This document shows, piece after piece, positions 939-15,932 of a stretch of DNA of 64,000 nucleotides. Under the pieces are notes generated by a model. The model was not told where the DNA came from. It did no database searches and worked only from the letters and a program-made list of their open reading frames with translations. The DNA lies in the IMG/VR virus record IMGVR_UViG_3300017971_000185, positions 62,001 to 126,000 of that record; one strand, 5' to 3'. The first letter of the stretch is position 1; each line of letters starts with the position of its first letter. Both the position numbers and the translations under genes were made by a program.

Positions 939-3900
939 ATGCCAGACGGCACCCAGATTCCTGGTCACATTTACGCGCCCCCCAACGTCTACGTCGAGAC
1001 TCAGACTGACACGCCGGTTCAAGCACCGATTCAGGGTGTTCGCATTCCGGTGTTCATCGGCACGGGCAACGAGGTTCTGACTCAGACGGATCTCGCGGTG
1101 GTTCGCGGGTCGTCTTCCAGTGTTGACCAGCAGGTTCCGCAGGAGGACATGACCGGCCGCGCGGTTGTCGCAATTCTGGCTTCCGGCGAGGTCGTCCTGG
1201 GTGACTTCGATGGTGATCGGCGGCTCATCCAGGTGCGCAATTATCCCATCGTCACGGGCGACGGGACGGGTACCACGGCGACGGATGCAGCCAGCATCCA
1301 GGTGACGATCAACGGGCAGCCTGACGTGGTTTTGAACGTCCAGGGGGACAGAGGGGTGCTTGAGCTTTCGACGGCTCCAGGGCTCCATGACGACGTGAGA
1401 TGCACGTATTTCTTCAACCGGACCGACACGCTGATCACGGACGACGTGAGCGATCAGGTGACTGCGGATCCCGCGCTCATTTACGGGAGCGGCGAGGAAC
1501 CCGCAGGCGGCTACGACATCACGGTGGACAACAATGAGTTGATCCTGACCATCGATGGCGTCGAGACCACCATCAGCCTGGGGACGCCGGGCGTGAAGCC
1601 CGCAGCTACCGTGGTCTCGTTGATCAACGGAGCGGCCTCTTCTACGTCTCTTGTGGCTTCGCTCTACACCACGAATTTCGGCGGCACTGCCATCCAATTC
1701 GTGGCCGACGAAAACCTCATCGTTGGTGCCGGTACGGCCAACACACTTCTTGGTCTGACCACGGGTGACGCGACCAATCGGCGCTCGACGTTCTACACAT
1801 TCCAGGGTCCGATCGTTGACGGTTCCAACGGAGGAATCACGACCACGGACACCGGGAAGGTGACGGTCCGCGTCAACAATGTCCAGGTCATCCCCACGTC
1901 CGTCAATGGATCGACGCGAGCGGTGACGTTGCCCTTTGCTCCGGCTGCTGGCTCGACCGTCACCATCGAGTACTTTTTCAATAGTTGGCAAGATACCTTC
2001 GACTATCTGGCGAACATCAACCTCACGGAGATCACCCGAGTCGGCATCGTTCCGGGGAACAGCGATTTCGTGCAGGGTGCGGACTTCGTGCTCAAGGATG
2101 ATGTCATTGTCTGGGGTACGTCGGTTCTCATCACTTCGGGTGTTCACACCGAAGGAAGCACGTACTTCGGTGGAGATGGAGGCCAGGTCAGCGCGCTCTT
2201 GGTGGATGCGCAGACGTACTTGGAGGAAGCCACTCCTGTCACGGATGCGACGGTCAGCCCGCCAGTTACGAGTCGGACGAAATTCGACCTTCCGTTCCAG
2301 CCCACGACGGGCAACGGACGCAACACGCCGATCGGGTTGAGTCTGTTCCAGACGGTCAGCAACAACCGTATCGATCTTCCGACCAATCGCCCGGATCTGG
2401 TGATCGCCTATTGGGGCTTCTCGGTCGAGGATGCTTTGCAGCGTGGTCCGGTGGACGTGACAGCGGTCGAGGGAACCAGGATCACTTTGAAGGATCCCGT
2501 GGACGTGGGTGCAACGGTCTACGCCACGTTCTACTACAACACGCTCGTAGATGAGGAGTACAGCCTGGTTTGTGACGTGGCTGGTGCTTCGGGCATTGGT
2601 ACCTATTTCATCCAAGACTCGAATAGCAACGACATGTTCACGCCGCGGTTTGGCGTGAAGGGGGCTGCGCTCACGGGCATCACCATCCAATTCCCGAGCG
2701 GCAGCGAGCTAACCCCGGACGTGCGTTTCGAGAGTGGTACGGACGGTCCGGTCGAGGAGACGGTCACGGTCTCGTTCGCGAGCATCGATGACACGATTGC
2801 GAAGTACAGCGTGCCCGGATCGGGACCGTACTTCACGATCGAGGATGCCTCTGATCATGCACGTTTCTTGATCGACGGCACGGCACCGACTGGTGGCGGA
2901 GCGGGAATCGATCTTGCCCGTGTGGACGGAATCACCGGCTTGGGCGTGTCGGCCAGCTTGCTGGGCGAGGAGATCGAGTATGACGTAGCCTCGGGCAGCA
3001 CGACCTACGACATTACGGCCGGGACCAACGACGAGGTTTCGGTCACGGTCGATGATGTGCTCATTACGTCGATCGCTGCGGCAGGAACGGGTGTCAACGC
3101 GGACAACTACGTTGACGCGCTCAATGCTTTCGCCAAGCTGCAACAGTTTGCTCCGTTCTACACGGCACAGACACGTTTCGTGGGGTCGACGGTCATTACT
3201 GCCGGCGAGTACGACACTTTGGTCATGCACTACAATGGTGCTGTGGCAGGCCCATCGGGTGCGATCACGGCGATCATTCCGCCGCTGACCTACGCCAGCC
3301 CCATGGCTCTGGCAACGGCTCTGGATGGAGTGATTGCAGCCGCAGTCGGTGGTTTGGGTCCGGCGTTTGCCGGGTTGGCGATCAACGTTACTGTGGATGC
3401 CAATAGCCGGCTCCGATTCACGTTGCAGGCGGCGACGGGAGACATCGGCACTTTCGCGGCCGGTGGTGTCATCACCGTGGCGTTAGTGCCGGTCGTGGGT
3501 GACCAGATCATCTTCACGGATTGGGCTGGGAACCAGGCAGCACTCACGGCAGATACGGCCACAACGCCAGGCGGCAACAACTTCGACGTGTCGTCCGGTG
3601 TGGCAGCCACGATCGCTGGTCAGATCGCTATAGCGATTCAAGATGTGACGAACAACGTGGCTTCGATCGTGACCACGACGGGCGCTGTTGGTGTGACGAT
3701 TCCAGTGGTGCCAACTGTTCCGGGTACGCTCGGAAACCGGGTCGTCATGGCCGAATCCGCCGCAACTCCGGCAACCTTCACGTTCGTACAGCCTTCGGGC
3801 GCGACGGACTTGGCAGGTGGCTATTTGGAGTTTGCGGACGCACCGACGCTTGCCAGCGATTTCGCGATTCTGGCAGGCATCAGCGTGGCTCCGGCACCGG

Positions 3901-6278
3901 GAGGATTGCAGACCAAGTTGCTCAACGGAGACATCGCTCGGCGCTTCTCGGTAGCGGGCGGTTCCGGTGCGCTTATCTACGATCGCATCATTCTCCGCAA
4001 CCGCATCATGCCTGGATCGGGCAGCGTGGCCGGGCCTTCCCAGCTTGCGCAGACAGAGCTACGCATCGAGGGGAACAATGCGATCACGGAGACGGGTCTC
4101 CAGCCCAACGACGCTGGGTTGGCGGCGATGGGGGCGGTCGTGCAGCCAGCGACGCTGTTTGGCGAAGTGGGGTTTGTCAGCGGTCAGGTGCCGACAGGCG
4201 CCTACGGGGATGCTCGCGACGGGCAGCCGGTGGTGACGTTCTTCGCAGACGGAGGCACACAGCCGCAGAACAACGTGTTCAAGATCAACATCGATGGCAT
4301 CATGGTGAACGTCACGTTCACGGATGCTGCGGGTGTGGTCATTCCGGCTGGCGGCACAGCAGACGTACCGTTGGGGCCGGGAACGATCGCGAACACGATT
4401 CTGGCACAGCTAGACGCCGCCGCAGTGGCGGCTGGGTTGCCCGCGGGCACGTTCTTGCCAGAAGGCGCTGGTATTCGGATCGTGAGCGGCACGTCTCGCG
4501 TGTCCTCAGCGATCACGGTTGGAGCCGGGAATGCCAACGATGTGTTGGGATTCTCGTCTGGCGGCACGGCGGCACGGACGGAGGTAGAGCCCGAGCAGAT
4601 TGCTTCGGCTCTCATGGCGCATCACGACGCAACGGTATCGGCCAAGCTCCTGAGCTACTCCTCGCCAGGAGTGACCTACTTCGCTGGCTTGGCTCTTGCT
4701 GGTGTCATCAGGGATGCGGCGAATGCCGAATTCCTGTACCTCCAGAGTCAGGCGAGCACGGTCGGAGGTCTGGGTCTGTCGAGCAGCATTGCGCTGCTAC
4801 AGCCCACGGTTGGAAACGGTAGCTGGCTGCTTCCAGGCACGGGCATCAATGCCGAGGTTGGTGACGGCGCATCCGGTGAGGAAGGCTTCAACGGATACTA
4901 CGTCACATCGTCCGATCCGACAGACGGGTCCGGGTCAGCGAACACGTCGAGGCTCAACAACGGAGTGGGTCAAGATGGCGTGATCGGCCAGACGTATCGA
5001 GATACCGTCACGGGTCTCACGTTCACGGTTCTGGCACGTGAGGGTGGCGGGGTGTACCCGACTGGTGTGGGTGCAACCTTCACTTTCGAGGTACGCAATA
5101 AGGTCATCACGGACAGCAACCTTCCGGTCAACACAATCCCCGGAATCGAGCTTTTGGTGACGAACACCACTGGCGTCGCGGTCGGGGACACGGCTGTGGT
5201 CGATACGATCGAGCGCGGGGGCAGCGAGCCTGCCGTGGGCGATCTCTACTACGCGACCTACAACTACCAAAAGGAAAGTTTCGACACTGGCTTGTACACA
5301 CGGCTGGCAACGATCGAGCGTGTGTTTGGTGCAACATCGCCAGAGCATCTTCTGTCCCTGGCGGCGTATGTGTCGATCATCAACGGGGCGGTTGTCGTTG
5401 GGCTCAAACAGGTTCCCAAGCAGCCCAACAGCAATCAGGGCAGTATCACGGACTACTTCGATGCCGTGGACGATGTGCGTGGAGTCCTCCCAGGTGGGGC
5501 GAGGCTCAGCACGCTCACTCCGTTGCGTGGAGACTCGGAGGAGCTATTCCAGAAGATCAGTCAGCATGTTGATCTCCAGTCCAGCATCCGGCTGCGATCG
5601 GAGAGAACCTCGATCTTTGGCGTTTCCTCGGGGACGCAGCCCTCGGCTGCGGGAGACCTGGCCGAGTTGCTGGGCAACACCCGGATGAGGATGGTCTACC
5701 CAGACATCGCCAAGATCACGCTGACCGATGCGGTGAACAACGACAAGCAATTCCTGGTTGACGGCACGATTCTCTCGGCGGCAATGGCAGGAAACCGAGC
5801 AAGCCCGAACATCGACGTGGCAACGCCATGGACACGGGCACGATTGCTCGGGTTCGATGAGCTTGCTCGTATCCTCGATGCGGTCGAGCAGAATCAGGTT
5901 GCCGTGCGCGGCGTGACGATCTTGGAGGATCGCCGTCCGGCAATCAGTGTGCGCCATGGGCTCACGACGGATGTCACCAACGTCCTGACCAAGACCCCAA
6001 CCGTGATGACGATTGCGGATGAGGTACAGCAGCAGACTCGCGTGACGCTGGACAGGTTCATCGGGGTCAAATTCCTGCCCGGTATCCTGAATCAGATCGA
6101 AGGTCGCCTGACCTTCATGCTCAAGGGGCTCATCGCGGCGGAGATCATCGCTGCCTTCACTGGAGTGCAGGCTCAGACAACGAGTGATCCAACGGTGGTT
6201 GCGGTCGAAGCATGGTATCAGCCTGTTTTCCCGCTACTATACATCATCGTCACCTTCAACCTCCGCTCAGTTTTGTGA
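939..6278 (+). CDS. Contractile tail sheath protein, very large with inserted domains
   Basis: N-terminal YAPPNVYVE (PGVY-type motif); C-terminal sheath domain ...TVMTIADEV...DRFIG...DPTVVAVEAWYQPVFPLLYIIVTFNL; upstream of tube and tape measure genes. Confidence 0.9.
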   Translation: MPDGTQIPGHIYAPPNVYVETQTDTPVQAPIQGVRIPVFIGTGNEVLTQTDLAVVRGSSSSVDQQVPQEDMTGRAVVAILASGEVVLGDFDGDRRLIQVRNYPIVTGDGTGTTATDAASIQVTINGQPDVVLNVQGDRGVLELSTAPGLHDDVRCTYFFNRTDTLITDDVSDQVTADPALIYGSGEEPAGGYDITVDNNELILTIDGVETTISLGTPGVKPAATVVSLINGAASSTSLVASLYTTNFGGTAIQFVADENLIVGAGTANTLLGLTTGDATNRRSTFYTFQGPIVDGSNGGITTTDTGKVTVRVNNVQVIPTSVNGSTRAVTLPFAPAAGSTVTIEYFFNSWQDTFDYLANINLTEITRVGIVPGNSDFVQGADFVLKDDVIVWGTSVLITSGVHTEGSTYFGGDGGQVSALLVDAQTYLEEATPVTDATVSPPVTSRTKFDLPFQPTTGNGRNTPIGLSLFQTVSNNRIDLPTNRPDLVIAYWGFSVEDALQRGPVDVTAVEGTRITLKDPVDVGATVYATFYYNTLVDEEYSLVCDVAGASGIGTYFIQDSNSNDMFTPRFGVKGAALTGITIQFPSGSELTPDVRFESGTDGPVEETVTVSFASIDDTIAKYSVPGSGPYFTIEDASDHARFLIDGTAPTGGGAGIDLARVDGITGLGVSASLLGEEIEYDVASGSTTYDITAGTNDEVSVTVDDVLITSIAAAGTGVNADNYVDALNAFAKLQQFAPFYTAQTRFVGSTVITAGEYDTLVMHYNGAVAGPSGAITAIIPPLTYASPMALATALDGVIAAAVGGLGPAFAGLAINVTVDANSRLRFTLQAATGDIGTFAAGGVITVALVPVVGDQIIFTDWAGNQAALTADTATTPGGNNFDVSSGVAATIAGQIAIAIQDVTNNVASIVTTTGAVGVTIPVVPTVPGTLGNRVVMAESAATPATFTFVQPSGATDLAGGYLEFADAPTLASDFAILAGISVAPAPGGLQTKLLNGDIARRFSVAGGSGALIYDRIILRNRIMPGSGSVAGPSQLAQTELRIEGNNAITETGLQPNDAGLAAMGAVVQPATLFGEVGFVSGQVPTGAYGDARDGQPVVTFFADGGTQPQNNVFKINIDGIMVNVTFTDAAGVVIPAGGTADVPLGPGTIANTILAQLDAAAVAAGLPAGTFLPEGAGIRIVSGTSRVSSAITVGAGNANDVLGFSSGGTAARTEVEPEQIASALMAHHDATVSAKLLSYSSPGVTYFAGLALAGVIRDAANAEFLYLQSQASTVGGLGLSSSIALLQPTVGNGSWLLPGTGINAEVGDGASGEEGFNGYYVTSSDPTDGSGSANTSRLNNGVGQDGVIGQTYRDTVTGLTFTVLAREGGGVYPTGVGATFTFEVRNKVITDSNLPVNTIPGIELLVTNTTGVAVGDTAVVDTIERGGSEPAVGDLYYATYNYQKESFDTGLYTRLATIERVFGATSPEHLLSLAAYVSIINGAVVVGLKQVPKQPNSNQGSITDYFDAVDDVRGVLPGGARLSTLTPLRGDSEELFQKISQHVDLQSSIRLRSERTSIFGVSSGTQPSAAGDLAELLGNTRMRMVYPDIAKITLTDAVNNDKQFLVDGTILSAAMAGNRASPNIDVATPWTRARLLGFDELARILDAVEQNQVAVRGVTILEDRRPAISVRHGLTTDVTNVLTKTPTVMTIADEVQQQTRVTLDRFIGVKFLPGILNQIEGRLTFMLKGLIAAEIIAAFTGVQAQTTSDPTVVAVEAWYQPVFPLLYIIVTFNLRSVL

Positions 6279-6322
6279 GGTACACTAGCGCTCTAGGCTA
6301 GTACAGAGCCCAAAAGCGGCGT

Positions 6323-6352
6323 TTGCCGTGGGGTCTGTGGTGGTGGTATGGT
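6323..6352 (+). promoter_or_regulatory. Sigma70-like promoter for a leaderless nuclease-MTase mRNA
   Basis: TTGCCG (6323-6328)-N18-TATGGT (6347-6352) with TGn extension; ATG 6 nt downstream at 6359 and no clear SD. Confidence 0.5.
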
Positions 6353-6358
6353 GGTGGT

Positions 6359-8542
6359 ATGGATGAGGAGATCTGTGCAGCCTTTCGGTCCGATCTGTCT
6401 TCTGCCGCGGTTGCTGAATCGTTGGGGGTTGGTCGACAGCGTGTTCTCAAAGTCTGGAAGGCTTCCTTTGGTGCCGGTGAGGTAAGAGCACGTGCGAATA
6501 GGCTTCGCTCTCGCCCCAAGAAAGAAGATCCTCAGCAACGGGCAGCAGCTCTGCCGTGGTTCGCTGAGGGTGTGGCAGTCAAGGAGGCTGCGCGAAGATT
6601 GGGTGTCCACTATCTCAAGGTTCAACGATGGTGGATCGAAGAGTTTGGAGAAGAAGTATATCGGAGTCGTGGAAAGCGTCTTCAAGCTGCGCGAACGGCA
6701 GCCAATAACCGTAGAGGATTGCCGAAGACGCAAACGGTTGTACGAGTCGCCTGTGAAGACTGCGGCACGGAACACGACCGTACAATGATGAGTTTGGCCA
6801 AGGCTGCGCGGCTCATTTGTCCAACGTGTAAGAGCAAGAAGCAAGATCCGCATGCGTGTCCGGTGTGTGGTTTTGTGTTCGAAGGCGCTCGGGGGTTGGC
6901 GTCTCATTTTCGGCATCAACGGAATTGCTCTGCGCATAAGGAGTATCGACGCAAGCAATGGGAAGTCCTGGCAAGTCGGACTGACGAGTACGTGACTTGC
7001 CAGGAGTGTGGCTTCGTAGGTCGGTCGATTTCGGCTCATATTCAAACACACGACCTAAATTGGAGGAGCTACACGCGTAAGTATCCTGGTGCTCCTCTGT
7101 ATTCGGCGATCTCAGAGGCACGGAGGCGTGCTCGTATCCGGGAAACACATGCCAGGTACGGATTCACATACGCGGACTTCAAGGCGTACCTGGATGACGA
7201 GCATCGTTTGATTGTGGCGGCTGCGGCTAAGGGATTGGGAGTTGCTCAAGATACGGTGCGGACATACGCGAAGAAACTAGACATCCCTACGCGGAATCGA
7301 TTGGCGTGGCAGCGAGAAGTCTTGCAGACGGTAGCTGATGTTTTGGGCGAAGCGTATAAGTGGGAATGGTCTGACGATCGTATTCGAAATCCCGAGACGG
7401 GGAGGTTACTGAATTATGACGGCTGTTTTCCCAAGTCAAAGGTGATCGTGGAGTGCCATGGAATTCAGCATTACCAGTTTGTTCCTCGATGGCACCGTCT
7501 TCCAGAGGAATTTGTCAAGTTGCGGGAGCGAGACGTTTACAAAAAAGAGCGAGCGGAGGAGCTTGGCTATACCGTGATCGAAGTGCGCTATGATGCAGAG
7601 GTATCTCGTGAGTTTTTCATGGAGTTGTTGCGAGCACCAAAGAAGAGTCGTCAGGCGGTGAAGGACAAGGCCGAGACAATTCTGCGGGAGCTACGGAGGG
7701 ATTGCTTTCCGTTTCCGGTGATCGATCCAGAGGAGACTCGGAGGGAGTTGGAAAGGCTACAACGGAAGCGCCTGAAGTTAGTTGACGGGATTATCGTTCC
7801 TCGTTCGTGGGTTGGGACCAAAGTCTGCAAAGCATATTTCCCCAATCTCTTCCAAGCCAGGTACAAGAATCAGCTATCGGCTGTAGAGGCGTGGAATTCG
7901 GATGAGAAGCTCCGGCTTGCTATCCTGACTCAACTAGACTCGTCGCATCCGACGACACCAGAACGAGTGCTTAAGGCGATTCTGATGCATCATCGGGTTC
8001 CTACGGTTTTCCGTCCAGCTTATGCTCGATACTTGTATGACCGCTACTGCCCGGAAGGCAAGACAACATGGGATCCTTGCGCAGGGTGGGGCGGGCGTCT
8101 CTTGGGCGCCGCAGCGGCGAATGTGAGATACATCGGAACGGAGATTGATGCTCTTACTGTCGAGGGGAATCGCAGGTTAGCTTCCGATCTGCGGCATGAC
8201 GCGGAGATCATTGAAGGGTCGGCATTGGGCGCGGACATCCCTCAGGTAGACTTTGTATTCACCTCTCCGCCCTACTATGACGTTGAGCAGTATTCAGACC
8301 ATCCTGAACAACCTCACATGCGATTTGGTTCCGAGGAGGATTGGGTAGAGGGGTTTCTCTTGCCTTTGGTCAGGAAGGCACGTTCTGTGCTGCCTCAAGG
8401 CTGCGCTATGGCTCTCAACCTCTCCGATGCCTTGCTAGGGCGTCTAGAAGAGTGCGCTTTTGATTGTGGTTTTGAGCTTGAGACCGTGGTTGGCTTTGAG
8501 CTTCCGAATGGAAAGGTTGCTCGGACAGCCGTTTACCGATAG
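6359..8542 (+). CDS. HTH/zinc-finger + PD-(D/E)xK (DUF559/Vsr-like) endonuclease fused to amino-DNA methyltransferase
   Basis: CEDC..CPTC, CPVC..H..H, CQEC..H..H fingers; NYDGCFPKSKVIVECHGIQHY..RDVYK nuclease motif; MTase motif I WDPCAGWGGRLLG and motif IV FTSPPYY; more A/T-ending codons than neighbours. Confidence 0.85.
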   Translation: MDEEICAAFRSDLSSAAVAESLGVGRQRVLKVWKASFGAGEVRARANRLRSRPKKEDPQQRAAALPWFAEGVAVKEAARRLGVHYLKVQRWWIEEFGEEVYRSRGKRLQAARTAANNRRGLPKTQTVVRVACEDCGTEHDRTMMSLAKAARLICPTCKSKKQDPHACPVCGFVFEGARGLASHFRHQRNCSAHKEYRRKQWEVLASRTDEYVTCQECGFVGRSISAHIQTHDLNWRSYTRKYPGAPLYSAISEARRRARIRETHARYGFTYADFKAYLDDEHRLIVAAAAKGLGVAQDTVRTYAKKLDIPTRNRLAWQREVLQTVADVLGEAYKWEWSDDRIRNPETGRLLNYDGCFPKSKVIVECHGIQHYQFVPRWHRLPEEFVKLRERDVYKKERAEELGYTVIEVRYDAEVSREFFMELLRAPKKSRQAVKDKAETILRELRRDCFPFPVIDPEETRRELERLQRKRLKLVDGIIVPRSWVGTKVCKAYFPNLFQARYKNQLSAVEAWNSDEKLRLAILTQLDSSHPTTPERVLKAILMHHRVPTVFRPAYARYLYDRYCPEGKTTWDPCAGWGGRLLGAAAANVRYIGTEIDALTVEGNRRLASDLRHDAEIIEGSALGADIPQVDFVFTSPPYYDVEQYSDHPEQPHMRFGSEEDWVEGFLLPLVRKARSVLPQGCAMALNLSDALLGRLEECAFDCGFELETVVGFELPNGKVARTAVYR

Positions 8543-8798
8543 TCGTTCTAGTCGTGTTTTCCCATCAGAGGATCGGGCTTCGTTGCAGAAGCGACGAAAC
8601 GGGGGCTTGCAAGAAGCCTCTTGCCAAGAGTCGTAGCCAGGTTCGGCGTATTCGCCAGCGAACCAGATCGCTTCGATTTGGCGTCGTCCTTGGGGCGTCT
8701 TGGCCGAACGAACGGCAGCTTGTAGGGCTGGGCGACACGTCATGGGAGCCATTGGGTGCTTTCTCAGCACATCGATGGCGTGGTGTTTCGCAACTACG

Positions 8799-8869
8799 GC
8801 CGAAGCCCAAGGGCGGTATCGATTCCCGTCCTTGGGCTGTCACGCCATTGTCGGGTTAGTTGAAGTCAC
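8799..8869. repeat. 71-bp direct repeat copy 1 (hairpin + duplicated DUF932 3' end)
   Basis: 68/71 identical to 9907-9977 (offset 1108); includes hairpin 8804-8838. Confidence 0.95.
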
Positions 8870-8906
8870 CCGCTGCTGTATATTCAACCTCAGGTCGGTG
8901 CTGTAG
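8870..8906 (+). pseudogene. Relic of a second allele of the tail sheath 3' end
   Basis: ccg ctg ctg tat att / ttc aac ctc agg tcg gtg ctg tag encodes PLLYI and FNLRSVL*, matching sheath end PLLYIIVTFNLRSVL* (6231-6278) with synonymous differences and 11 nt fewer. Confidence 0.85.
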
Positions 8907-8920
8907 TTGCTCAGTCTTGG

Positions 8921-8942
8921 GGCCGCCGGATTTCCGGCGGCC
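8921..8942. terminator. Perfect GC hairpin, probable bidirectional terminator
   Basis: GGCCGCCGGA-TT-TCCGGCGGCC between relic sheath stop and the stop of the convergent gene at 8943. Confidence 0.7.
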
Positions 8943-9311
8943 TCACTTCTTCTTGACCTTCCAGGGAGTGGTCTCTTCTGGGTGGAACGTGGCCTCGATG
9001 CCAGCCTCATCGAGCGCGCCAACGAGATCAAGAAGCATCAGGAGCGAAGTCTCGATCGTGTCTTTTGGGGACTTGGTGGAAAACTTGTAAGCCTGGTCTC
9101 CGAAACGGAGGGAGACGGTTTGACAGTCGCTAGAGATGTGGATGGACGAGTGGTCTCGGATGCTCATGCGTGCCTCTACCGCTCGCGCTTCGGCTGCGTC
9201 GCGCTTGTCTTGCAGTGCAGTTGTTGTCGATACATGGTCCACGAACCGCACCCACCCGCCGTCGTCGGCCGCGTACATGCCGGAAGGTCTCCATTCGTAT
9301 CGCTTATCCAC
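8943..9311 (-). CDS. Hypothetical protein
   Basis: 122-aa ORF overlapping the upstream gene stop, ends at the terminator hairpin. Confidence 0.65.
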   Translation of the reverse strand: MDKRYEWRPSGMYAADDGGWVRFVDHVSTTTALQDKRDAAEARAVEARMSIRDHSSIHISSDCQTVSLRFGDQAYKFSTKSPKDTIETSLLMLLDLVGALDEAGIEATFHPEETTPWKVKKK

Positions 9312-9633
9312 TGTCCGACTTCTTTCCGTAACGCCCGATGCACTCGTCGCGTTTGCGTTGGATCTCGGTCTCGTCTTGCTCGGTGGTGCGGGGTGGCCTG
9401 TCGTTCATCCACGCGAGGTCAAAGGCAGCGCACGCCTTCTCGGGAGTGTCGCCAAACCCGGCCACGCCAACCTGCAAGTCTTCGCCTAGCAGCGCGCACC
9501 ACTGGTTTCCGTCTGGGAAAATGCGTGGCCGGAACACGACTGAGGGGCGCGAATACTGCTCGCCTACGATCGCTGCCTGTCTACAGATCTCTGCGCCTGC
9601 GGCCGTTGCTTCTAGCCCGACCGTCGTCCTCAT
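9304..9633 (-). CDS. Phage hypothetical protein (DGNQWCAL...GVAGFGDTP, possibly HicB-like fold)
   Basis: ATG at 9633 with GGAG SD; recognisable phage motif; the listed longer ORF start (9918) is unlikely. Confidence 0.7.
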   Translation of the reverse strand: MRTTVGLEATAAGAEICRQAAIVGEQYSRPSVVFRPRIFPDGNQWCALLGEDLQVGVAGFGDTPEKACAAFDLAWMNDRPPRTTEQDETEIQRKRDECIGRYGKKSDSG

Positions 9634-9634
9634 C

Positions 9635-9697
9635 TCACTTCTCCCATTGTCCGAAGCCGGCATCGCGATAGCCAGGTCGTCCCGTGTAGTTAGCCAT
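9635..9697 (-). CDS. 20-aa peptide MANYTGRPGYRDAGFGQWEK
   Basis: Fills the gap between RHH stop (9699) and next ATG (9633) with 1-nt spacers; GGAAGG upstream. Confidence 0.4.
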   Translation of the reverse strand: MANYTGRPGYRDAGFGQWEK

Positions 9698-9698
9698 A

Positions 9699-9860
9699 TT
9701 AGCCTTCCAGGGGTGGTAGGGCGACTTGGAGGACAGCCCGTACCAGCGTAGAGGGCGATACCCCGCGGTCCCTCGCTATCTTCTCCAGCCGGGCGCGGTA
9801 GCCTGCCGGCAACCGAAGGTGGAAATGCTCGGAAAGCTCGACGCCCCTGTTCGAGAGCAC
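9699..9860 (-). CDS. Ribbon-helix-helix (CopG/Arc-like) DNA-binding protein
   Basis: HFHLRLPAGYRARLEKIARDRGVSPSTLVRAVL fits the RHH pattern; start (GTG 9860) uncertain. Confidence 0.7.
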   Translation of the reverse strand: MLSNRGVELSEHFHLRLPAGYRARLEKIARDRGVSPSTLVRAVLQVALPPLEG

Positions 9861-9906
9861 GAAGTCGATCTGGGTTGAAAGGTCTCTTGATCGCAATGTT
9901 GCACCT

Positions 9907-9977
9907 GCCGAAGCCCAAGGGCGGTATCGATTCCCGTCCTTGGGCTGTCGCGCCGTTGTCAGGTTAGTTGAAGTCAC
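9907..9977. repeat. 71-bp direct repeat copy 2 (DUF932 stop + terminator-like hairpin 9912-9946)
   Basis: AGCCCAAGGGCGG-N9-CCGTCCTTGGGCT just downstream of DUF932 TAA. Confidence 0.95.
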
Positions 9978-10770
9978 GCCGGAGGCCACAGAAGCCATCG
10001 AGCAGGACGTGAAGCTGCTCAGTCTTGGCCGGAAGGGTGAAGAGATCGTTGCTTTCGCGTCGGGGCTTGAGAACCTCGGTAAACGCGTTCATCAGCCGCC
10101 AGGTGGTCGGTCCCGCTTCTCGGAATTCGGGGTGACGGGGCTCTCTCCACTCGGAGAGGATCTGCGAGATCTTGCTGGAGGCGATGACATCGGCATCGAG
10201 CGCGCGAATGAGCAGGTCGTTTACCTGCGCGTCGTTTAGCTCGTGCTGCTTGTACGTCGCGAGGCGCTGGTCTTGGAAGTCCTTGAGCGCTGCGACTTGC
10301 TGGAGAGCCTCGGCGATCAGCTTGGCAAGATCGCGAAGGATGTTCGGGGTGTGCTTGCGACCGACCTTGATTTCGCCGGAGAAGCACAGGTTGTCGCAAA
10401 CGAACACGCCCGAGCCGACTACAAGGCCAGCCAGGAACGTCTTGTCGTTGGCGTTGCGGAGCCCGAGGATGATGCTGTAGTCCGGGTCGAGGATCGGGCT
10501 GTTCATCTCCGTGGGAACAGGATCGAGCACCGGAGCCGGTGCTACTTCCAGCATTCCGAAGTAGCGCAGGTTCTCGTGAGAGAGTGCGTGTACCTCTTGG
10601 ATGGTGGTTAGCCCCACGGTGGTGATTTGGTTCTCCACTTCCTCCAGCAGTGTGCTGTGGGGGATGGGGGTGTGTCTTGGGCCGGCGGCCTCAGGCTCGG
10701 GCAGCGTAAAGAGGACTTCCCGAGGAACCTGATGGGCACCGCAGTGAGTCAAGAGGTTGAGGTTTGTCAT
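9964..10770 (-). CDS. DUF932-family protein
   Basis: HTPIPH, GLRNANDK, VFVCDNLCFSGE, RKHT, TTWRLMNAFTE motifs; GGAG SD. Confidence 0.85.
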   Translation of the reverse strand: MTNLNLLTHCGAHQVPREVLFTLPEPEAAGPRHTPIPHSTLLEEVENQITTVGLTTIQEVHALSHENLRYFGMLEVAPAPVLDPVPTEMNSPILDPDYSIILGLRNANDKTFLAGLVVGSGVFVCDNLCFSGEIKVGRKHTPNILRDLAKLIAEALQQVAALKDFQDQRLATYKQHELNDAQVNDLLIRALDADVIASSKISQILSEWREPRHPEFREAGPTTWRLMNAFTEVLKPRRESNDLFTLPAKTEQLHVLLDGFCGLRRDFN

Positions 10771-10788
10771 GTCGTATCTCCTGTCTCT

Positions 10789-10816
10789 TCTACGCGAGAT
10801 TCGGGGGAAAGTTTAC
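10789..10816 (-). promoter_or_regulatory. ECF-like early promoter GTAAACTT-N12-CGCGTAGA, copy A
   Basis: Identical boxes and spacing in three places, each 17-18 nt before an ATG. Confidence 0.8.
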
Positions 10817-10824
10817 ATAGTCGC

Positions 10825-11280
10825 TCATTCGCATCGGCGAATCGGAGCTTTTCTAGGTTGCGGGGTGTTTACATAGTATGTCTTCGCTTCGGATCTGAGC
10901 CACTTCAAGAAGATGGTAACCCTCGGTGCGTCGTATTCGTTCACGGTTTTCAAGGGCGCGTCCATACCCTTCTTAAAGGCTGCGAAGGCTTGCTTTTGCT
11001 TCATCCACAGACCGTCGCTGGGTATGAGCCATAGACGTTCCCAATTGTTGCTCAGGCAGAGGGCTTCATCGAGAGACTCGACAGGCTCAAAGTACCAAGC
11101 CCAGTGCCCCTTGCAGGTTCCACCGATGCAGCCGGGCGAGATGACCCAACCCTCTTCGTAGTCCTTGCAAAGTGTGCCGATGGTGATGCCTTCTACGCGC
11201 ACGTCGTATTGACAAGCGTTGCGGTGCTTTTCGGCCAGCCGCTTGAATTCGACGTTCATCTTTTGGTAGCCGCTGATCAT
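10825..11280 (-). CDS. Hypothetical protein
   Basis: ATG 2 nt after PolX stop; 151 aa. Confidence 0.6.
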   Translation of the reverse strand: MISGYQKMNVEFKRLAEKHRNACQYDVRVEGITIGTLCKDYEEGWVISPGCIGGTCKGHWAWYFEPVESLDEALCLSNNWERLWLIPSDGLWMKQKQAFAAFKKGMDAPLKTVNEYDAPRVTIFLKWLRSEAKTYYVNTPQPRKAPIRRCE

Positions 11281-11282
11281 GT

Positions 11283-12023
11283 TTAGCTCGCTATCTCGCA
11301 CTCTTTGTTGTACTTGGCCTGAGCGGTCTCGATGTGACGGCATTTGCGCCGAAACTGGAAGCCCTCGCACTCGCAATTCCAGCGGTTGTTCTTGCCAAGC
11401 CAGACTCGGTAAGAACCATCCTTGGCGCTCGGGATCTCGCACTCCCATTCGACTTCGCCACGGAAGCACTTGAGATCGTCACGAGCGGGCGGGGTGGTGT
11501 ACTCCAGCCCGAGCGCTTCGAAAACCTCGCGTTCGGTCTTACCGGCGATGCGCCGATACCAGCGCTTTTCAGTCTCGCCCTTCCGCTTGACGTGAATGAA
11601 CGCGTAGCCCTGGGACTCGTCCGTTTCCTCGGGATCACATGGCTTGTATACGCCCTTTTCGTTGAGGAGTAGCCCCAGCGCGGCGGCGTGGCTTCGCATC
11701 TTGATGTTGAAGGTATGCGGGCCGGTCAGGTAGAGCCACGCGGCGCCGAAGCCATCTTCATCGGGCGCTCGGATCACGTCTACCTGCATGCCACCCACGA
11801 TGAGCCGGATCTTGGCATCCTTTCCTTGGACCCACTCGAAACCAGCTTTCTCGATTTCCGCCTGTGTGGGTAGCGTGCCGAGGAACACGATATCGACATC
11901 GCGAACGTACTCTTTGCCACGACGGAGAGAGCCGGCGATCTTGGCTTCCTTACCGAGCAAGGCGAGGACGGGAGCTACTCGCTCGACCGCGACGCCCTGG
12001 GGAATCTTCTTACCTTTGCTCAT
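11283..12023 (-). CDS. Minimal X-family DNA polymerase with C-terminal SWIM zinc finger
   Basis: AGSLRRGKEYVRDVDIV, QVDV, YLTGP..FNIKMR, LNEKG, TEREVFEALGLEY..P..R; then YRV...WNCECEGFQFRRKCRHI (CxC-xn-CxH). Confidence 0.88.
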   Translation of the reverse strand: MSKGKKIPQGVAVERVAPVLALLGKEAKIAGSLRRGKEYVRDVDIVFLGTLPTQAEIEKAGFEWVQGKDAKIRLIVGGMQVDVIRAPDEDGFGAAWLYLTGPHTFNIKMRSHAAALGLLLNEKGVYKPCDPEETDESQGYAFIHVKRKGETEKRWYRRIAGKTEREVFEALGLEYTTPPARDDLKCFRGEVEWECEIPSAKDGSYRVWLGKNNRWNCECEGFQFRRKCRHIETAQAKYNKECEIAS

Positions 12024-12303
12024 CGTTGGTCTCCTTTAGCCGATACCAGAGGAAGCCTCGGTCTACACACTCAGCGACTCGAATGGCAGTGCTCTCCAGC
12101 ACGAGATGCTTGACCGGATGCCCGGACGAGCAAACCGGACACGGTCCGGTGAATGAGCCGGTGATTCGTATTCGTGCTCCGCCAAGCTCGGAAGGAAGCC
12201 TGACCCAATCGGGAGCGCCGTCGCCCACGAGGTACATGCTCTCGTCCTCCGTGGAGGGTGAGGCGAAGTCGCCGGGGCGGCGGTTGAACCATGCGGTGGT
12301 CAT
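12010..12303 (-). CDS. Hypothetical protein (CPVC, possible Zn site)
   Basis: ATG in a TGATG overlap with the upstream stop. Confidence 0.6.
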   Translation of the reverse strand: MTTAWFNRRPGDFASPSTEDESMYLVGDGAPDWVRLPSELGGARIRITGSFTGPCPVCSSGHPVKHLVLESTAIRVAECVDRGFLWYRLKETNDEQR

Positions 12304-13722: not shown

Positions 13723-14520
13723 ATGCCAAACACCGATCTAGTCCAGGGAGGCGCAGCAGGGCTCCAGGGCTCTAGCTCCGTCTACGACTACGGGACTTCC
13801 CCCAACACGAGAACAGCCGTTTCACAGAAGGTGAGGATCTTGTCCCCGGCCTACGGGACGACAAGTCAGCTTCTTCAGATTGGCGTGCTGACCAACTTCA
13901 CACCTTCCGAGAGTCGCACTGTCGAGCCCCTACGCGGCATTGGGTTTGGCGATCAGATCGCTGAGCTTGTGCCGTCCGTGACGACAGAGATGACGCTGAG
14001 CTTTGAGCGAGCGTTGCTCTACATGGCGAATCTCTGGCAGGCGACTGGTTACGCTGGAGGCATCGACGGGCCCGTGCGTTCGTTGAAGCATCACAGGTGG
14101 CCGTTCGATGTGGAGGAGCAGCTTGTGTTTTCGACTCTTGTCGATATGGCACTTGGAGTCGAGAACGTGGGCTACCAGGGTCAGGGTTTCCAGGGAGGAA
14201 CGGCTCAGATCGTCTATCCCGATCAGCTAGATGGCGAGACCGGCCCGACTCCCAACGGTCCTTTCCCGCAGGGTGGCCAGCAGGGACACACGGCCATCAT
14301 CACCATGTACGAGGCGTGCTGGTTCACGTCTTGGTCCAAGACCAACATCACCCGCGACACGGGAATGCTCATGGAGACGGGAGATGCGATGGTCACCGAC
14401 GTTCACGACTTCGCCTCCGAGTACGGAGAATTTCTGGCTACGGGCAACGACCCATCCGTAGGCCAGCTTGGATCAGTCAGGTTTGGCGATCCACAGGCAG
14501 GAGGGACGCCGTTCGGCTAG
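13723..14520 (+). CDS. Tail tube protein
   Basis: IGVLTNFTPSESRTVEPLRGIG..ELVP, PFD, YEACWFTSWS tube-fold pattern; AGGAG SD; position between sheath and tape measure. Confidence 0.8.
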   Translation: MPNTDLVQGGAAGLQGSSSVYDYGTSPNTRTAVSQKVRILSPAYGTTSQLLQIGVLTNFTPSESRTVEPLRGIGFGDQIAELVPSVTTEMTLSFERALLYMANLWQATGYAGGIDGPVRSLKHHRWPFDVEEQLVFSTLVDMALGVENVGYQGQGFQGGTAQIVYPDQLDGETGPTPNGPFPQGGQQGHTAIITMYEACWFTSWSKTNITRDTGMLMETGDAMVTDVHDFASEYGEFLATGNDPSVGQLGSVRFGDPQAGGTPFG

Positions 14521-14526
14521 GGTACA

Positions 14527-14708
14527 GTGGCCTAAAACCGAGCAGTCGGTGGTTTCCAAGAATCAGACGCAGATGAATATCAGATCATATCCAGATTCCC
14601 GTGCTGTCTCCTAAACCCTATATCAGATCCAGACCCACATAGATCAGACCCAGATTCGTTTGCGCTGTTTTCCAGGCCACCGCTTGCTCTCTCAACGGGA
14701 GTAGCGGT
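14527..14708 (+). ncRNA. Candidate structured leader with CAGA repeats and SD-sequestering hairpin
   Basis: Closing stem GTGGCCT (14527-33)/AGGCCAC (14674-80) around 8 CAGAY units; hairpin 14679-14708 pairs GGGAG just before ATG 14709. Confidence 0.5.
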
Positions 14709-15932
14709 ATGACAATCAACTTTGAGGCTCTGCAAGCCTCGCTCGAAAAGATCGGGCAACTAGGCCAAGCGGAGCGTTCTTTCAAAGCAGGCGACCACGC
14801 GATCACCATTCGTGTGCTTCAAGCACGTGAGGAGATCGAGGTCGATAAGTACGCTCAGATAGCCTGGGATGAGGCTTCGGGAGATGAAGACCGGGCTGCC
14901 TTGGCGGACTACATCGATCGGGTGCGGGTAGCCACTCTGTCACACGTCATCGTTCAGATTGGCGATCAAGACCTTCGACGGGAGGAGTTTGTCGAGACGG
15001 GGGAGGAGGACGAGAACGGGAACAAGGTCAAGAAGCCTCGTTATCTCGTGATTCGCGAGATGATCGGCAAGTGGAGTCGGCCTGTTTTGCACATGTGTTA
15101 CCTCAACTACGGGACTTTGGTTCAAGAAGTCGAGAGTGCTTCTAGTAAGAGTATCGAGTCCTCAGAGGCTAACGTCGGGGGAGAGATCGATCGCCTTCAA
15201 ACGCGGTTAGAGAACCTCAAGCGCATTCAGAGTGAGCAGAAGGCCATGGCTGATCGTGCCGCCATGACGGCGCAGACACGAGAGGCTCTCGGTGAGTACA
15301 GCCAAGCCCATGAGGATCACATTGACCGACTGGCAACTGTGACGGGAGAGGTTGTAGAAGAGTCCGAGTCCGAGCCCGAGGCCGCGCCCAAGGCTGAAGG
15401 CGCGACCGAGCCCCCGAAGCGGCCTGTCAGACGAGAGCCGACGATACCACGTCGGGCAGTGCCGCCTGTGCGCGCTCAGAAGTCCGAACCTGTTGATGCG
15501 GACGGGATACCGCTGCCACATGAGGGGGATTCGTTCTACGATCCGGCCGATGGGGATGCGGCTGTAGCGGCTGAGCACAAACGTCTGGAAGCTTTCCGAC
15601 AACAAAAGATGCGGGCGCAATCGAGACCCACAGCAGAACCAGAAGCGCCTGAATCTCCAGAACCGGAACCGGAGCCCCTTGAGCCTTTGCCTGGGGTGAC
15701 GCGAGGACGGAAGCCGCCACACCGAGACGCACTCAACACGGCTGACGCCGTGCTCAATCTTCAGGGAGAGACGGTAGTGGACCAGCCCAAAGCTGCCACG
15801 GAAGCAGTAGAGGGTGTTCGATTGCCGACAGAGACCCTAAGTCCTCGATCGAAGCCAACAGAAAAACCAACGAAGGCTCCTGTGGATCCTCCACCAACGG
15901 GCTCAAGAAACCCGCGGTTTAGAGGTGCGTAG
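14709..15932 (+). CDS. Probable tail assembly chaperone with long Pro/Glu-rich C-terminus
   Basis: Position between tube and tape measure; ITIRVLQAREE chaperone-like start. Confidence 0.6.
   Translation: MTINFEALQASLEKIGQLGQAERSFKAGDHAITIRVLQAREEIEVDKYAQIAWDEASGDEDRAALADYIDRVRVATLSHVIVQIGDQDLRREEFVETGEEDENGNKVKKPRYLVIREMIGKWSRPVLHMCYLNYGTLVQEVESASSKSIESSEANVGGEIDRLQTRLENLKRIQSEQKAMADRAAMTAQTREALGEYSQAHEDHIDRLATVTGEVVEESESEPEAAPKAEGATEPPKRPVRREPTIPRRAVPPVRAQKSEPVDADGIPLPHEGDSFYDPADGDAAVAAEHKRLEAFRQQKMRAQSRPTAEPEAPESPEPEPEPLEPLPGVTRGRKPPHRDALNTADAVLNLQGETVVDQPKAATEAVEGVRLPTETLSPRSKPTEKPTKAPVDPPPTGSRNPRFRGA

What the first reader, a model, noticed from the sequence alone, without database searches (positions are those of the whole stretch)
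8799..8920. Chimeric 122-bp junction: DUF932 3' copy with a same-length swap of sheath sequence and an apparent templated insertion
Seen: 8799-8869 matches 9907-9977 (68/71) and 8908-8920 matches 10016-10028 (13/13) at the same offset of 1108. The 38 nt between them are sheath-derived. GTCAC occurs in both the DUF932 end (9973-9977) and the sheath (6249-6253). The relic can be read as GTCACC + CGCTGCTGTATA (copied from slightly upstream in the sheath allele) + TTCAAC. Inference: this is a microhomology/template-switch repair scar, possibly at the nuclease cut site, and the PolX gene 2.4 kb away is a candidate for making it. A less likely alternative is a hairpin-flanked small RNA (hairpins 8804-8838 and 8921-8942) with a split guide/antisense segment against a competitor sheath allele.
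Basis: partly seen in the sequence, partly recalled or inferred. Interest (0 to 1): 0.75.

Follow-up and report, generated by a model that had tools for sequence, protein, structure and literature searches.

The report
Layered recombination scar in a megaphage
The 122-bp "chimera" is the dead, displaced original end of the DUF932 gene, still next to the stump of its old neighbour gene, with a 37-nt patch copied from a relative's tail-sheath gene end; it is a fossil of several recombination events, not a working element.

Summary
Positions 8799-8869 and 8908-8920 repeat 9907-9977 and 10016-10028 at one offset (1108). The 37 nt between them encode the last 12 codons of the sheath-like gene, split by an 11-nt deletion. 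Five or more independent assemblies carry the junction unchanged.

Two contigs of the closest relatives (L127, which is the same phage as L003, and L129) change the reading.
- There the order is sheath, then g99, g300, g269, an intergenic hairpin and DUF932 on the opposite strand, with no nuclease gene.
- In the window, 8611-8760 is the 5' stump of g269, collinear with 8799-8869.
- So this copy is the original DUF932 end in place, not an ectopic copy.
- It was cut off when a three-gene module (8921-9906) arrived together with a fresh 122-bp DUF932 end.
- A Vsr-like nuclease-methylase gene now occupies the place of g99, g300 and most of g269. That gene is sporadic among relatives and its tree disagrees with the sheath tree.
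- The patch matches the L003/L127 sheath allele (34/37), not the genome's own (27/37).

"Repair scar" is supported. "At the nuclease cut site", "made by PolX" and "small RNA" are not. The exact preservation of length is unexplained.

The parts
939..6278 (+). Giant (1779 aa) sheath-like structural gene. Its present 3' end, 6231-6278, encodes PLLYIIVTFNLRSVL*.
   Evidence: ORF. No Pfam or PHROG hit. The C-terminal 499 aa resemble tail-sheath clusters (Phage_sheath_1C, DUF2586) by language-model features, score 0.94; this is a lead only. The gene is conserved in about 70 related contigs.
6323..8542 (+). Nuclease-methyltransferase gene: HTH and Zn-ribbon/Ros-MucR N-terminus, a Vsr-like PD-(D/E)xK core at residues ~356-429, and an N6/N4 DNA methylase C-terminus.
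   Evidence: Pfam and PHROG hits. Invariant D-G...E..G.QH...D..K...R in 13 homologues. The AlphaFold model matches Vsr 1vsr/1cw0 (prob 1.0) and I-Bth0305I 3r3p. Its presence is sporadic on the sheath tree and its divergence is incongruent with the sheath's.
8611..8760 (-). 5' stump (RBS, ATG, about 45-50 codons, then frame-breaking indels) of the 269-aa gene that follows DUF932 in relatives; a pseudogene.
   Evidence: BLASTP 24/37, E=7e-14, against the N-terminus of L129 g269. tblastn with L127 g269 finds only this trace in the genome. DNA alignments. A 36-nt match at 94-97% covers 8633-8668.
8799..8869 (-). R1a: the old DUF932 stop region (last 14 nt of the ORF, 8856-8869) plus the 57-nt downstream intergenic region with hairpin 8804-8838, in its original place next to the g269 stump.
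   Evidence: 68/71 to 9907-9977. The left flank CGTAGTTG continues as in L127 and L129 (CGTGGTTG), whereas the left flank of R2 is the RBS and start of another gene. The hairpin is conserved at the same place in L127 and L129.
8870..8906 (+). Sheath 3'-end relic: PLLY codons (8870-8881), one stray base, then FNLRSVL* (8883-8906). It lacks 11 nt relative to a full allele and replaces the 32-38 nt that encode the conserved LHxxLD part of the DUF932 C-terminus.
   Evidence: It matches the L003/L127 allele at 34/37 and the window's own 6231-6278 at 27/37. The R2 version is the native DUF932 sequence.
8908..8920 (-). R1c: 13 nt (19 nt with 2 mismatches from 8902) of DUF932 coding sequence (KTEQL), in register with R1a.
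   Evidence: The homologous residues in relatives are shown.
8921..8942 (.). GC-rich 9-bp-stem hairpin, terminator-like on the + strand and lying after the g8943 stop on the - strand; the left end of the inserted module.
8943..9906 (-). Inserted three-gene module: g8943 (orphan), gX (9304-9633, member of a large unannotated family) and an RHH/Arc-like gene (about 9699-9893). It is absent from L127 and L129.
   Evidence: Gene calls. g8943 has no homologues. gX results. Weak Arc hit. Absence in relatives shown.
9907..10028 (-). R2: the working 3' end of DUF932 (9964-10028) plus its 57-nt intergenic hairpin, now followed by the RHH-like gene.
   Evidence: L129 homology to the window ends exactly at 9907.
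9964..10770 (-). DUF932 gene (268 aa).
   Evidence: Pfam PF06067, just under the cut-off. Its homologues carry PF06067.

Best explanation
8799-8920 is non-functional debris: the original 3' end of the DUF932 gene with its downstream intergenic hairpin.

Shown, from the present arrangement compared with relatives:
- In the closest relatives the order, in window orientation, is: sheath gene, terminator, then g99, g300, g269, hairpin and DUF932 on the opposite strand.
- In the window's lineage a three-gene module (8921-9906) now lies between the body of DUF932 and its old end. The module is flanked by a 122-bp duplication. The right-hand copy (9907-10028) serves the gene and the left-hand copy (8799-8920) is orphaned.
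- g99, g300 and all but about 50 codons of g269 are gone. In their place lies a Vsr-like nuclease-methylase gene that is sporadic and horizontally exchanged at this site among relatives.

Inferred:
- The module entered by recombination with homology on one side and an illegitimate join on the other, or by an equivalent route.
- Inside the orphaned DUF932 end, the 32-38 nt that encode its conserved C-terminal motif were overwritten by a short copy of the last 12 codons of a sheath allele of the L003/L127 (nuclease-less) type.
- That patch was templated during error-prone break repair or template switching. The source was either the lineage's own earlier sheath allele, about 2.3 kb away in cis, or a co-infecting relative.
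- The 11-nt gap inside the patch is either a second switch or a later deletion.

Unresolved: the order of the three events, and why the patch has exactly the length of what it replaced.
For: - Repeat and relic are real and statistically solid.
- The junction is fixed in many independent assemblies.
- L127 is 99.98% identical to L003 over 4.4 kb and carries DUF932, g269, g300, g99 and then the convergent sheath gene on one contig. It has no nuclease gene and no 8921-9906 module.
- L129 shows DUF932, a hairpin and g269, and its homology to the window stops exactly at 9907.
- Window 8611-8760 is the g269 5' stump, collinear with 8799-8869 just as in L127 and L129.
- The R2 version of the middle encodes the LHxxLD motif conserved in DUF932 homologues; the R1 version does not.
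- The two copies are 96% alike, whereas both are only about 65% like the L127/L129 intergenic region. The duplication therefore post-dates the split.
- Nuclease gene: Vsr-like fold and invariant catalytic-type residues. At least 10 gains or losses across 33 tips. Boundaries are exact in L010 versus L086, and L020 shows an internal deletion relative to L026. Phages with sheath 86-89% identical carry nucleases only 35-41% identical, while the window's nuclease is 52-56% identical to those of phages whose sheath is only 63-66% identical.
- A known analogue with displaced native gene ends exists: mobile endonuclease ORFs in fungal mitochondria (PMC3630166).
Against: - Length is preserved exactly (the patch equals the replaced stretch). 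No simple repair model predicts this, so it is either a coincidence of a few percent or a sign of a constraint I have not identified.
- No intermediate genome was found: none with the module but no patch, and none with the nuclease plus an intact g269.
- Polarity rests on parsimony and on the 96% identity of the two copies. L127 and L129 could in principle have lost the module by repeat-mediated deletion.
- Whether the present sheath 3' end was itself imported cannot be told. Window-L003 identity is 77% in the last 120 nt against 88% in the preceding 480 nt, but other 120-nt bins are as divergent.
- The nuclease gene could be an old backbone gene that is often lost rather than a homing gene. 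It sits between the sheath gene and the next conserved genes in many relatives.
- No transcript data were available, so lack of function is inferred, not shown.
Confidence: 0.75

Rival explanations
1. In a single event, a double-strand break at the nuclease's cut site in the sheath 3' end was repaired by microhomology-mediated joining. A copy of the DUF932 end from 1.1 kb away was used as filler, and the nearby PolX made it.
For: GTCAC microhomology is present at both sites. A PolX-like gene lies at 11283-12023. A nuclease gene is adjacent. The relic lacks 11 nt where a cut could have been.
Against: R1 is collinear with the g269 stump exactly as in relatives, so it is in its original place and is not filler. 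The relic is about 330 nt away from the nuclease gene's end. The genome has no Ku. The PolX-like ORF matches only the thumb domain plus SWIM. The patch's allele is not this genome's own.
Confidence: 0.07
2. Classical "C-terminal replacement" by a mobile endonuclease gene. The nuclease cassette brought its own sheath 3' end, and the relic is the displaced native sheath end left downstream.
For: The relic is closer to the nuclease-less relative's allele (34/37) than the in-frame end is (28/37), the pattern reported for fungal mobile ORFs (PMC3630166). The nuclease gene is sporadic and incongruent.
Against: The relic is not contiguous with the cassette. The g269 stump and the DUF932 hairpin lie between them, in an order impossible for a simple displacement (ancestral order: sheath end, g99, g300, g269, hairpin). 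The relic is bracketed in register by DUF932 sequence on both sides. None of 19 other nuclease-positive relatives has a relic. The co-conversion test is inconclusive. This model may still explain where the template allele came from.
Confidence: 0.12
3. A functional RNA or decoy. Read-through of the minus-strand DUF932 operon, or a hairpin-bounded small RNA, carries an antisense segment against the sheath mRNA of nuclease-less competitors. Alternatively the patch is a target-site mimic for the nuclease.
For: The patch matches a different lineage's allele rather than the genome's own. Strong hairpins lie on both sides. Length and reading frame are preserved.
Against: No Rfam family matches and no promoter-like site was found. 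Both hairpins have ordinary explanations. The antisense match is broken by an 11-nt gap and 3 mismatches. The structure occurs in one lineage only, so there is no evidence of conservation. It lies between two pseudogene fragments.
Confidence: 0.03
4. A diversity-generating retroelement (template and variable repeat pair), or a CRISPR-like repeat-spacer unit.
For: A ~120-bp repeat covers the 3' end of a gene with a second copy about 1.1 kb downstream and a nearby hairpin. The variable middle is 32-38 nt, a spacer-like length.
Against: The genome has no reverse transcriptase. The differences are a block replacement plus A/G transitions, not adenine-specific changes. The sequences flanking the middle are not copies of each other. 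There are only two copies in the genome.
Confidence: 0.01

Closest known systems
Mobile endonuclease ORFs (mORFs) of fungal mitochondria that create hybrid genes with a duplicated C-terminus (Allomyces macrogynus atp6; Glomus atp6, atp9, cox2, nad3); PMC3630166
   Same: An inserted module carries or creates a new in-frame gene end, and the old end survives downstream as an untranslated relic. The relic is closer to the allele of a close relative than the working end is. Here this applies clearly to DUF932 (R2 working, R1 displaced) and, at the allele level, to the sheath relic.
   Different: The module that displaced the DUF932 end has no recognisable endonuclease. The sheath relic is not next to the nuclease gene but embedded in another gene's relic. 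The host is a phage genome, not an organelle. The two DUF932 ends are 96% alike rather than strongly diverged.
Free-standing homing endonuclease genes of T4-like phages (SegF, SegG, MobE; "intronless homing"); from my own knowledge, not checked in the library
   Same: A nuclease gene lies between conserved genes, is present or absent among close relatives at one site with exact boundaries, and is exchanged horizontally.
   Different: The catalytic core is Vsr-like PD-(D/E)xK fused to a DNA methylase, not GIY-YIG or HNH. Cleavage and homing are untested. The gene is so common at this site that ancestral presence with repeated loss remains possible.
I-Bth0305I (EDxHD, Vsr-like homing endonuclease of a Bacillus jumbo phage; PDB 3r3p) and Vsr endonuclease (1vsr, 1cw0)
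   Same: Fold of the predicted nuclease core, and a conserved acidic/His motif pattern.
   Different: Foldseek E-values are weak (5e-3 and 0.4). There is no sequence-level match in the PDB. The domain context differs (zinc ribbons, HTH, methylase).
Homology-facilitated illegitimate recombination, and templated-insertion or template-switch repair (MMBIR, alt-EJ); capture of foreign DNA at breaks by bacterial NHEJ (PMC6379672)
   Same: A one-sided homologous anchor plus an illegitimate join gives partial duplications. Short patches are copied from a nearby or co-resident template, with 0-5 nt of microhomology at the joins (GTCAC, TG.AG, GG).
   Different: No enzyme can be assigned. The genome has no Ku. 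The patch preserves length exactly, which these mechanisms do not predict.

Membership tests
Free-standing homing endonuclease gene (for ORF 6323-8542) | Encodes a site-specific DNA endonuclease domain | tested here: met
   PHROG HNH/homing endonuclease hits at 1e-10 and 2e-8. Invariant D-G/E..G.QH/D..K residues. Vsr-like fold. Activity itself was not tested.
Free-standing homing endonuclease gene (for ORF 6323-8542) | Sporadic presence at one conserved site among related genomes, with a phylogeny incongruent with the flanking genes | tested here: met
   At least 10 changes across 33 tips. Exact boundaries in L010 versus L086. Sheath 86-89% identical against nuclease 35-41% identical in several pairs.
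Free-standing homing endonuclease gene (for ORF 6323-8542) | Cleaves the gene-less allele near the insertion site, with co-conversion of flanking markers | tested here: inconclusive
   Cleavage is not testable here. The identity drop to L003 in the last 120 nt of the sheath gene (77% against 88%) lies within the gene's own heterogeneity.
mORF-type C-terminal duplication (hybrid gene) | A duplicated 3' coding segment of the host gene lies downstream of the inserted module, and the upstream copy is in frame | tested here: met
   DUF932: R2 is in frame and native-like, R1 is displaced. Sheath: a 37-nt relic lies 2.6 kb downstream.
mORF-type C-terminal duplication (hybrid gene) | The inserted module encodes the endonuclease and abuts the displaced native end | tested here: not met
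   The module 8921-9906 has no recognisable nuclease. The sheath relic is separated from the nuclease gene by the g269 stump and the DUF932 hairpin.
Diversity-generating retroelement (template/variable repeat) | Reverse transcriptase nearby, and adenine-specific differences between the repeats | tested here: not met
   No RVT_1 in the genome. The differences are a block replacement plus 3 A/G transitions.
CRISPR-like repeat-spacer unit | The same repeat on both sides of the spacer, and an array of two or more units | tested here: not met
   The flanks 8799-8869 and 8908-8920 are unrelated to each other, and there are two copies only.
Known structured RNA family | Match to an Rfam covariance model | tested here: not met
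   No match with E up to 1 in 6200-10200 on either strand.
Intrinsic terminator (hairpin 8921-8942) | GC-rich stem followed by a T-rich tail | tested here: met
   The consensus scan lists 8918-8945 plus CTTCTTCTTG on the + strand. This is a consensus match only; the tail is T-rich rather than a clean T run.

The most novel reading that the evidence does not exclude
The patch is kept because it works. One version: as part of minus-strand read-through RNA, it is an antisense segment against the sheath mRNA of nuclease-less competitor phages of the L003/L127 type. Another version: it is a DNA mimic of the nuclease's target. In either version the exact preservation of length and register reflects selection rather than chance.
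Probability: 0.03. Interest if true: 0.75.

Novelty: new member of a known kind. Interest (0 to 1): 0.3.

Why it matters
This is a worked example of how accessory regions of very large phages are rebuilt. Within 1.4 kb there are at least six breakpoints:
- a gene-end duplication around an inserted three-gene module;
- a truncated neighbour gene beside a sporadic nuclease-methylase gene;
- a short patch that preserves a sheath allele of a different (nuclease-less) lineage.

It shows that displaced gene ends, well known around mobile endonuclease genes in fungal mitochondria, also occur in megaphages. Such relics can record earlier or foreign alleles.

It also serves as a caution. A striking "chimeric guide-like" structure between two hairpins turned out to be pseudogene debris once the right relatives were found.

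The register-preserving patch is a small open puzzle for people who study template-switch repair.

Tried and rejected
- Assembly artefact: rejected.
- Chance similarity of the middle to the sheath gene: rejected.
- Repeat family, MITE or PeSL-like cassette: only two copies exist in the genome and none in IMG/VR outside this phage.
- Rfam: no match. Sigma-70 promoters: none.
- DGR or retron: no reverse transcriptase. CRISPR-like unit: the flanks are not repeats of each other.
- Relic in its native place next to its own terminator (my first idea from L003): rejected. The 13 nt between relic and hairpin are DUF932 coding sequence, and L003's downstream gene is unrelated to g8943.
- Convergent overlap of the sheath and DUF932 ends as a native arrangement: rejected, because the sequence left of the relic is not sheath coding sequence.
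- Relics after the nuclease gene in other relatives: none found.
- Paralogues of the nuclease gene in the genome: none.
- Co-conversion tract in the sheath 3' end: inconclusive.
- Donor of the nuclease gene: the nearest homologues are only 47-50% identical.
- Origin of the inserted module: g8943 is an orphan. gX belongs to a huge unannotated family and was not followed up.
- DUF932 in 64% relatives: absent from five long contigs.
- Exact-protein look-ups for g8943 and the nuclease failed, probably because the called start codons differ.
- A shared nuclease-site motif (GTSAC..TTCAAC) in the sheath and DUF932 ends: noticed, but L003 lacks it in the sheath gene, so it was dropped.

Full report
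**1. The observation**

The window lies in a 497-kb, 57.7% GC, single-contig virus record.
- The repeat finder and a direct comparison confirm that 8799-8869 equals 9907-9977 at 68/71. They also confirm that 8908-8920 equals 10016-10028 at 13/13, or 17/19 from 8902. Both pairs lie at offset 1108.
- The 71-mer occurs only twice in the genome.
- The 37 nt in between read PLLY (8870-8881), one stray base, then FNLRSVL-stop (8883-8906). These are the last residues of the 1779-aa ORF 939-6278, whose end is PLLYIIVTFNLRSVL-stop. All differences are synonymous and 11 nt are missing.
- The C-terminal 499 aa of that ORF have no Pfam, PHROG or PDB sequence match. They do resemble tail-sheath clusters by language-model features. 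I therefore keep the name "sheath-like" as a lead only.

**2. The junction is not an artefact**

- The whole 5000-11000 stretch is 99.95-100% identical in three IMG/VR contigs from different samples, an ENA contig of 527 kb and JGI contigs. A 99.8% variant (L083) has 21 substitutions, none of them in the junction.
- Logan contigs of three separate runs (two sediment, one seawater) break only inside the exact 43-nt repeat core, as de Bruijn graphs must. A 1125-nt contig spans 8812-9936 at the depth of the flanks, and no alternative joints were seen.

**3. Which sheath allele the relic comes from**

- The closest relative first found, L003, is about 83% identical in DNA and 93% in protein. It ends its sheath gene with codons that match the relic at 34/37.
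- The window's present sheath end matches the relic at only 27/37 and matches L003 at 28/37.
- The alignment score of the relic against the L003 end is 25. The maximum in 20,000 random genome pieces was 14.5.
- The patch therefore derives from an L003-type allele, not from the gene now in this genome.

**4. The decisive relatives**

A search with the DUF932 protein found two 87% homologues. Their contigs were fetched.
- L127 overlaps L003 at 99.98% over 4.4 kb, so it is the same phage. On one contig it carries DUF932, a 269-aa gene (g269), g300 and g99, followed by the convergent sheath gene 38 nt after g99. It has no nuclease gene and none of the window's genes g8943, gX or the RHH-like gene.
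- L129 shows DUF932, a 74-nt spacer with a hairpin, then g269. Its homology to the window stops exactly at 9907.
- Aligning the minus strands shows that window 8611-8760 is the ribosome-binding site, ATG and first 45-50 codons of g269. BLASTP gives 24/37, E=7e-14. A 36-nt stretch is 94-97% identical, and frame-breaking indels follow.
- tblastn finds no other trace of g269, and none of g300, in the genome.
- The sequence directly left of 8799 (CGTAGTTG) continues as in L127 and L129 (CGTGGTTG). The sequence left of 9907 is instead the ribosome-binding site and TTG start of the RHH-like gene.
- Hence 8799-8869 is the original downstream region of DUF932, still joined to the stump of its old neighbour.
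- The R2 version of the middle encodes the LHxxLD motif conserved in DUF932 homologues. R2 is therefore the working gene end and R1 the orphaned one.
- The two copies are 96% alike but only about 65% like the L127/L129 spacer. The duplication therefore arose after the lineages split.

**5. The hairpins**

- Hairpin 8804-8838 has counterparts at the same place in L127 and L129. The outer stem is the same and the inner stem and loop differ. It is the ordinary hairpin after DUF932.
- Hairpin 8921-8942 scores as a terminator on the + strand and directly follows the g8943 stop on the - strand.
- Nothing matches Rfam, and no sigma-70-like promoter is present.

**6. The nuclease gene**

ORF 6323-8542 has three parts:
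- HTH and zinc-ribbon/Ros-MucR motifs at the N-terminus;
- a central core with invariant D-G, E..G.QH, D..K and R residues, whose model matches Vsr and, more weakly, the homing endonuclease I-Bth0305I;
- an N6/N4 DNA methylase C-terminus.

Its distribution among relatives points to horizontal exchange.
- Homologues sit directly after the sheath gene in 19 of 33 informative relatives. They are scattered over the sheath tree, which needs at least 10 changes.
- L010 versus L086 shows boundaries exactly at the sheath stop and about 60 nt after the nuclease stop. L020 shows a 1.2-kb internal deletion relative to L026.
- Phages whose sheath C-termini are 86-89% identical carry nucleases only 35-41% identical. 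The window's nuclease is 52-56% identical to those of phages whose sheath is only 63-66% identical.
- This incongruence supports horizontal exchange at this site. However, the gene also belongs to a widely shared backbone order (sheath, nuclease, AdoMet decarboxylase-like gene, 265-aa gene). Old presence with frequent loss is therefore not excluded.
- The nearest sampled homologues are only 47-50% identical.

**7. Reconstruction**

Shown:
- Relative to L127 and L129, the window lineage has (a) a module at 8921-9906 flanked by a 122-bp duplication of the DUF932 end, and (b) the nuclease gene where g99, g300 and most of g269 would be.
- It also has (c) a 32-38-nt replacement inside the orphaned DUF932 end by L003-type sheath sequence carrying an 11-nt gap.

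Inferred:
- (a) came from recombination anchored by homology in DUF932 and joined illegitimately on the far side.
- (b) came either from deletion or from replacement during acquisition of the nuclease gene.
- (c) is a templated patch from break repair or template switching. The joins show 0-5 nt of microhomology (C or GTCAC on the left, TG.AG on the right).
- The template was either the lineage's own earlier sheath end, about 2.3 kb away in the ancestral order, or a co-infecting L127-type genome.
- The two parsings of the relic (PLLY plus an 11-nt deletion, or GTCACC plus a 12-nt insertion) cannot be told apart.

**8. What remains unexplained**

- The patch has exactly the length of what it replaced, so the flanks stay in register, and the minus-strand frame stays open to the old stop. 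I see no mechanism that predicts this.
- Selection for frame while the copy was still the working gene end is conceivable but untested.
- The 68 nt at 8543-8610 have no assignable origin.
- The order of events (a) to (c) is unknown.

**9. Enzymes**

- The 246-aa ORF matches only the polymerase-beta thumb plus a SWIM finger.
- The genome has no Ku, and has one ATP-dependent ligase far away.

**10. Comparison with known systems**

- The closest described phenomenon is the duplicated C-terminus left by mobile endonuclease ORFs in fungal mitochondrial genes. There the displaced native end is closer to the allele of a sister species than the working end is (PMC3630166).
- The DUF932 duplication has that anatomy, but no nuclease lies in the inserted module.
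- The sheath relic has the same allele pattern but lies in the wrong place for a simple displacement.
- Capture of foreign DNA at breaks is documented for bacterial NHEJ (PMC6379672).
- DGR and CRISPR-like readings fail on their defining parts.

**11. Verdict**

This is a real, well-supported mosaic. It is best understood as layered recombination debris in a hypervariable island between the sheath gene and the next backbone genes of a megaphage. It is of moderate interest as natural history and low interest as a candidate new system.

Noticed in passing
L010:11568-15918 (also L092): In this 64% relative the nuclease-methylase homologue is split. Its N-terminal part lies at 11568-12209 and the rest at 14290-15918, with about 2 kb of other DNA between them. 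This could be a nested insertion or an intron-like element.
   Followed up: no
window 9304-9633 (-): gX (109 aa) belongs to a very large family of small proteins with no Pfam model. 1713 cluster representatives match at E<=1e-3, and the conserved core is about 60 residues.
   Followed up: partly
genome 330183-331629, 241928-243361 (inverted), 36599-36938 (outside the window): A ~1.45-kb gene-sized repeat is present in three diverged copies (82-85% identity), together with a separate 79-nt piece at 96% identity. This may be another mobile gene family.
   Followed up: no
window 8943-8945 and 8856-8942 (-): The minus-strand frame through the terminator hairpin and the orphaned DUF932 end is in frame with the TGA stop of g8943. 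Read-through would add 28 residues ending in DFN-stop. This is probably chance (1 in 3).
   Followed up: no
L127:983-1277 vs L129:6425-6498: L127 has about 220 extra nt between the DUF932 hairpin and g269 compared with L129. This is another indel hot spot at the same intergenic position where the window carries its inserted module.
   Followed up: no
window 8543-~12700 vs L131, L133, L007: The whole minus-strand block (DUF932, a 151-aa gene, the PolX-like gene and small ORFs) is an island. It is absent from 62-66% relatives, where the nuclease gene is followed directly by the AdoMet decarboxylase-like gene and the 265-aa gene.
   Followed up: partly
window 11283-12023 (-): The PolX-like ORF of 246 aa matches only the polymerase-beta thumb plus a SWIM zinc finger. 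It is 88% conserved in L129. Whether it is an active polymerase is unclear.
   Followed up: no
genome 303983-304267 and 492099-492392 (outside the window): The cysteine-rich 99-aa gene that follows the sheath gene in L127/L003 has two paralogues (56% and 41% identity) elsewhere in the window's genome, although the copy at this locus is gone.
   Followed up: no
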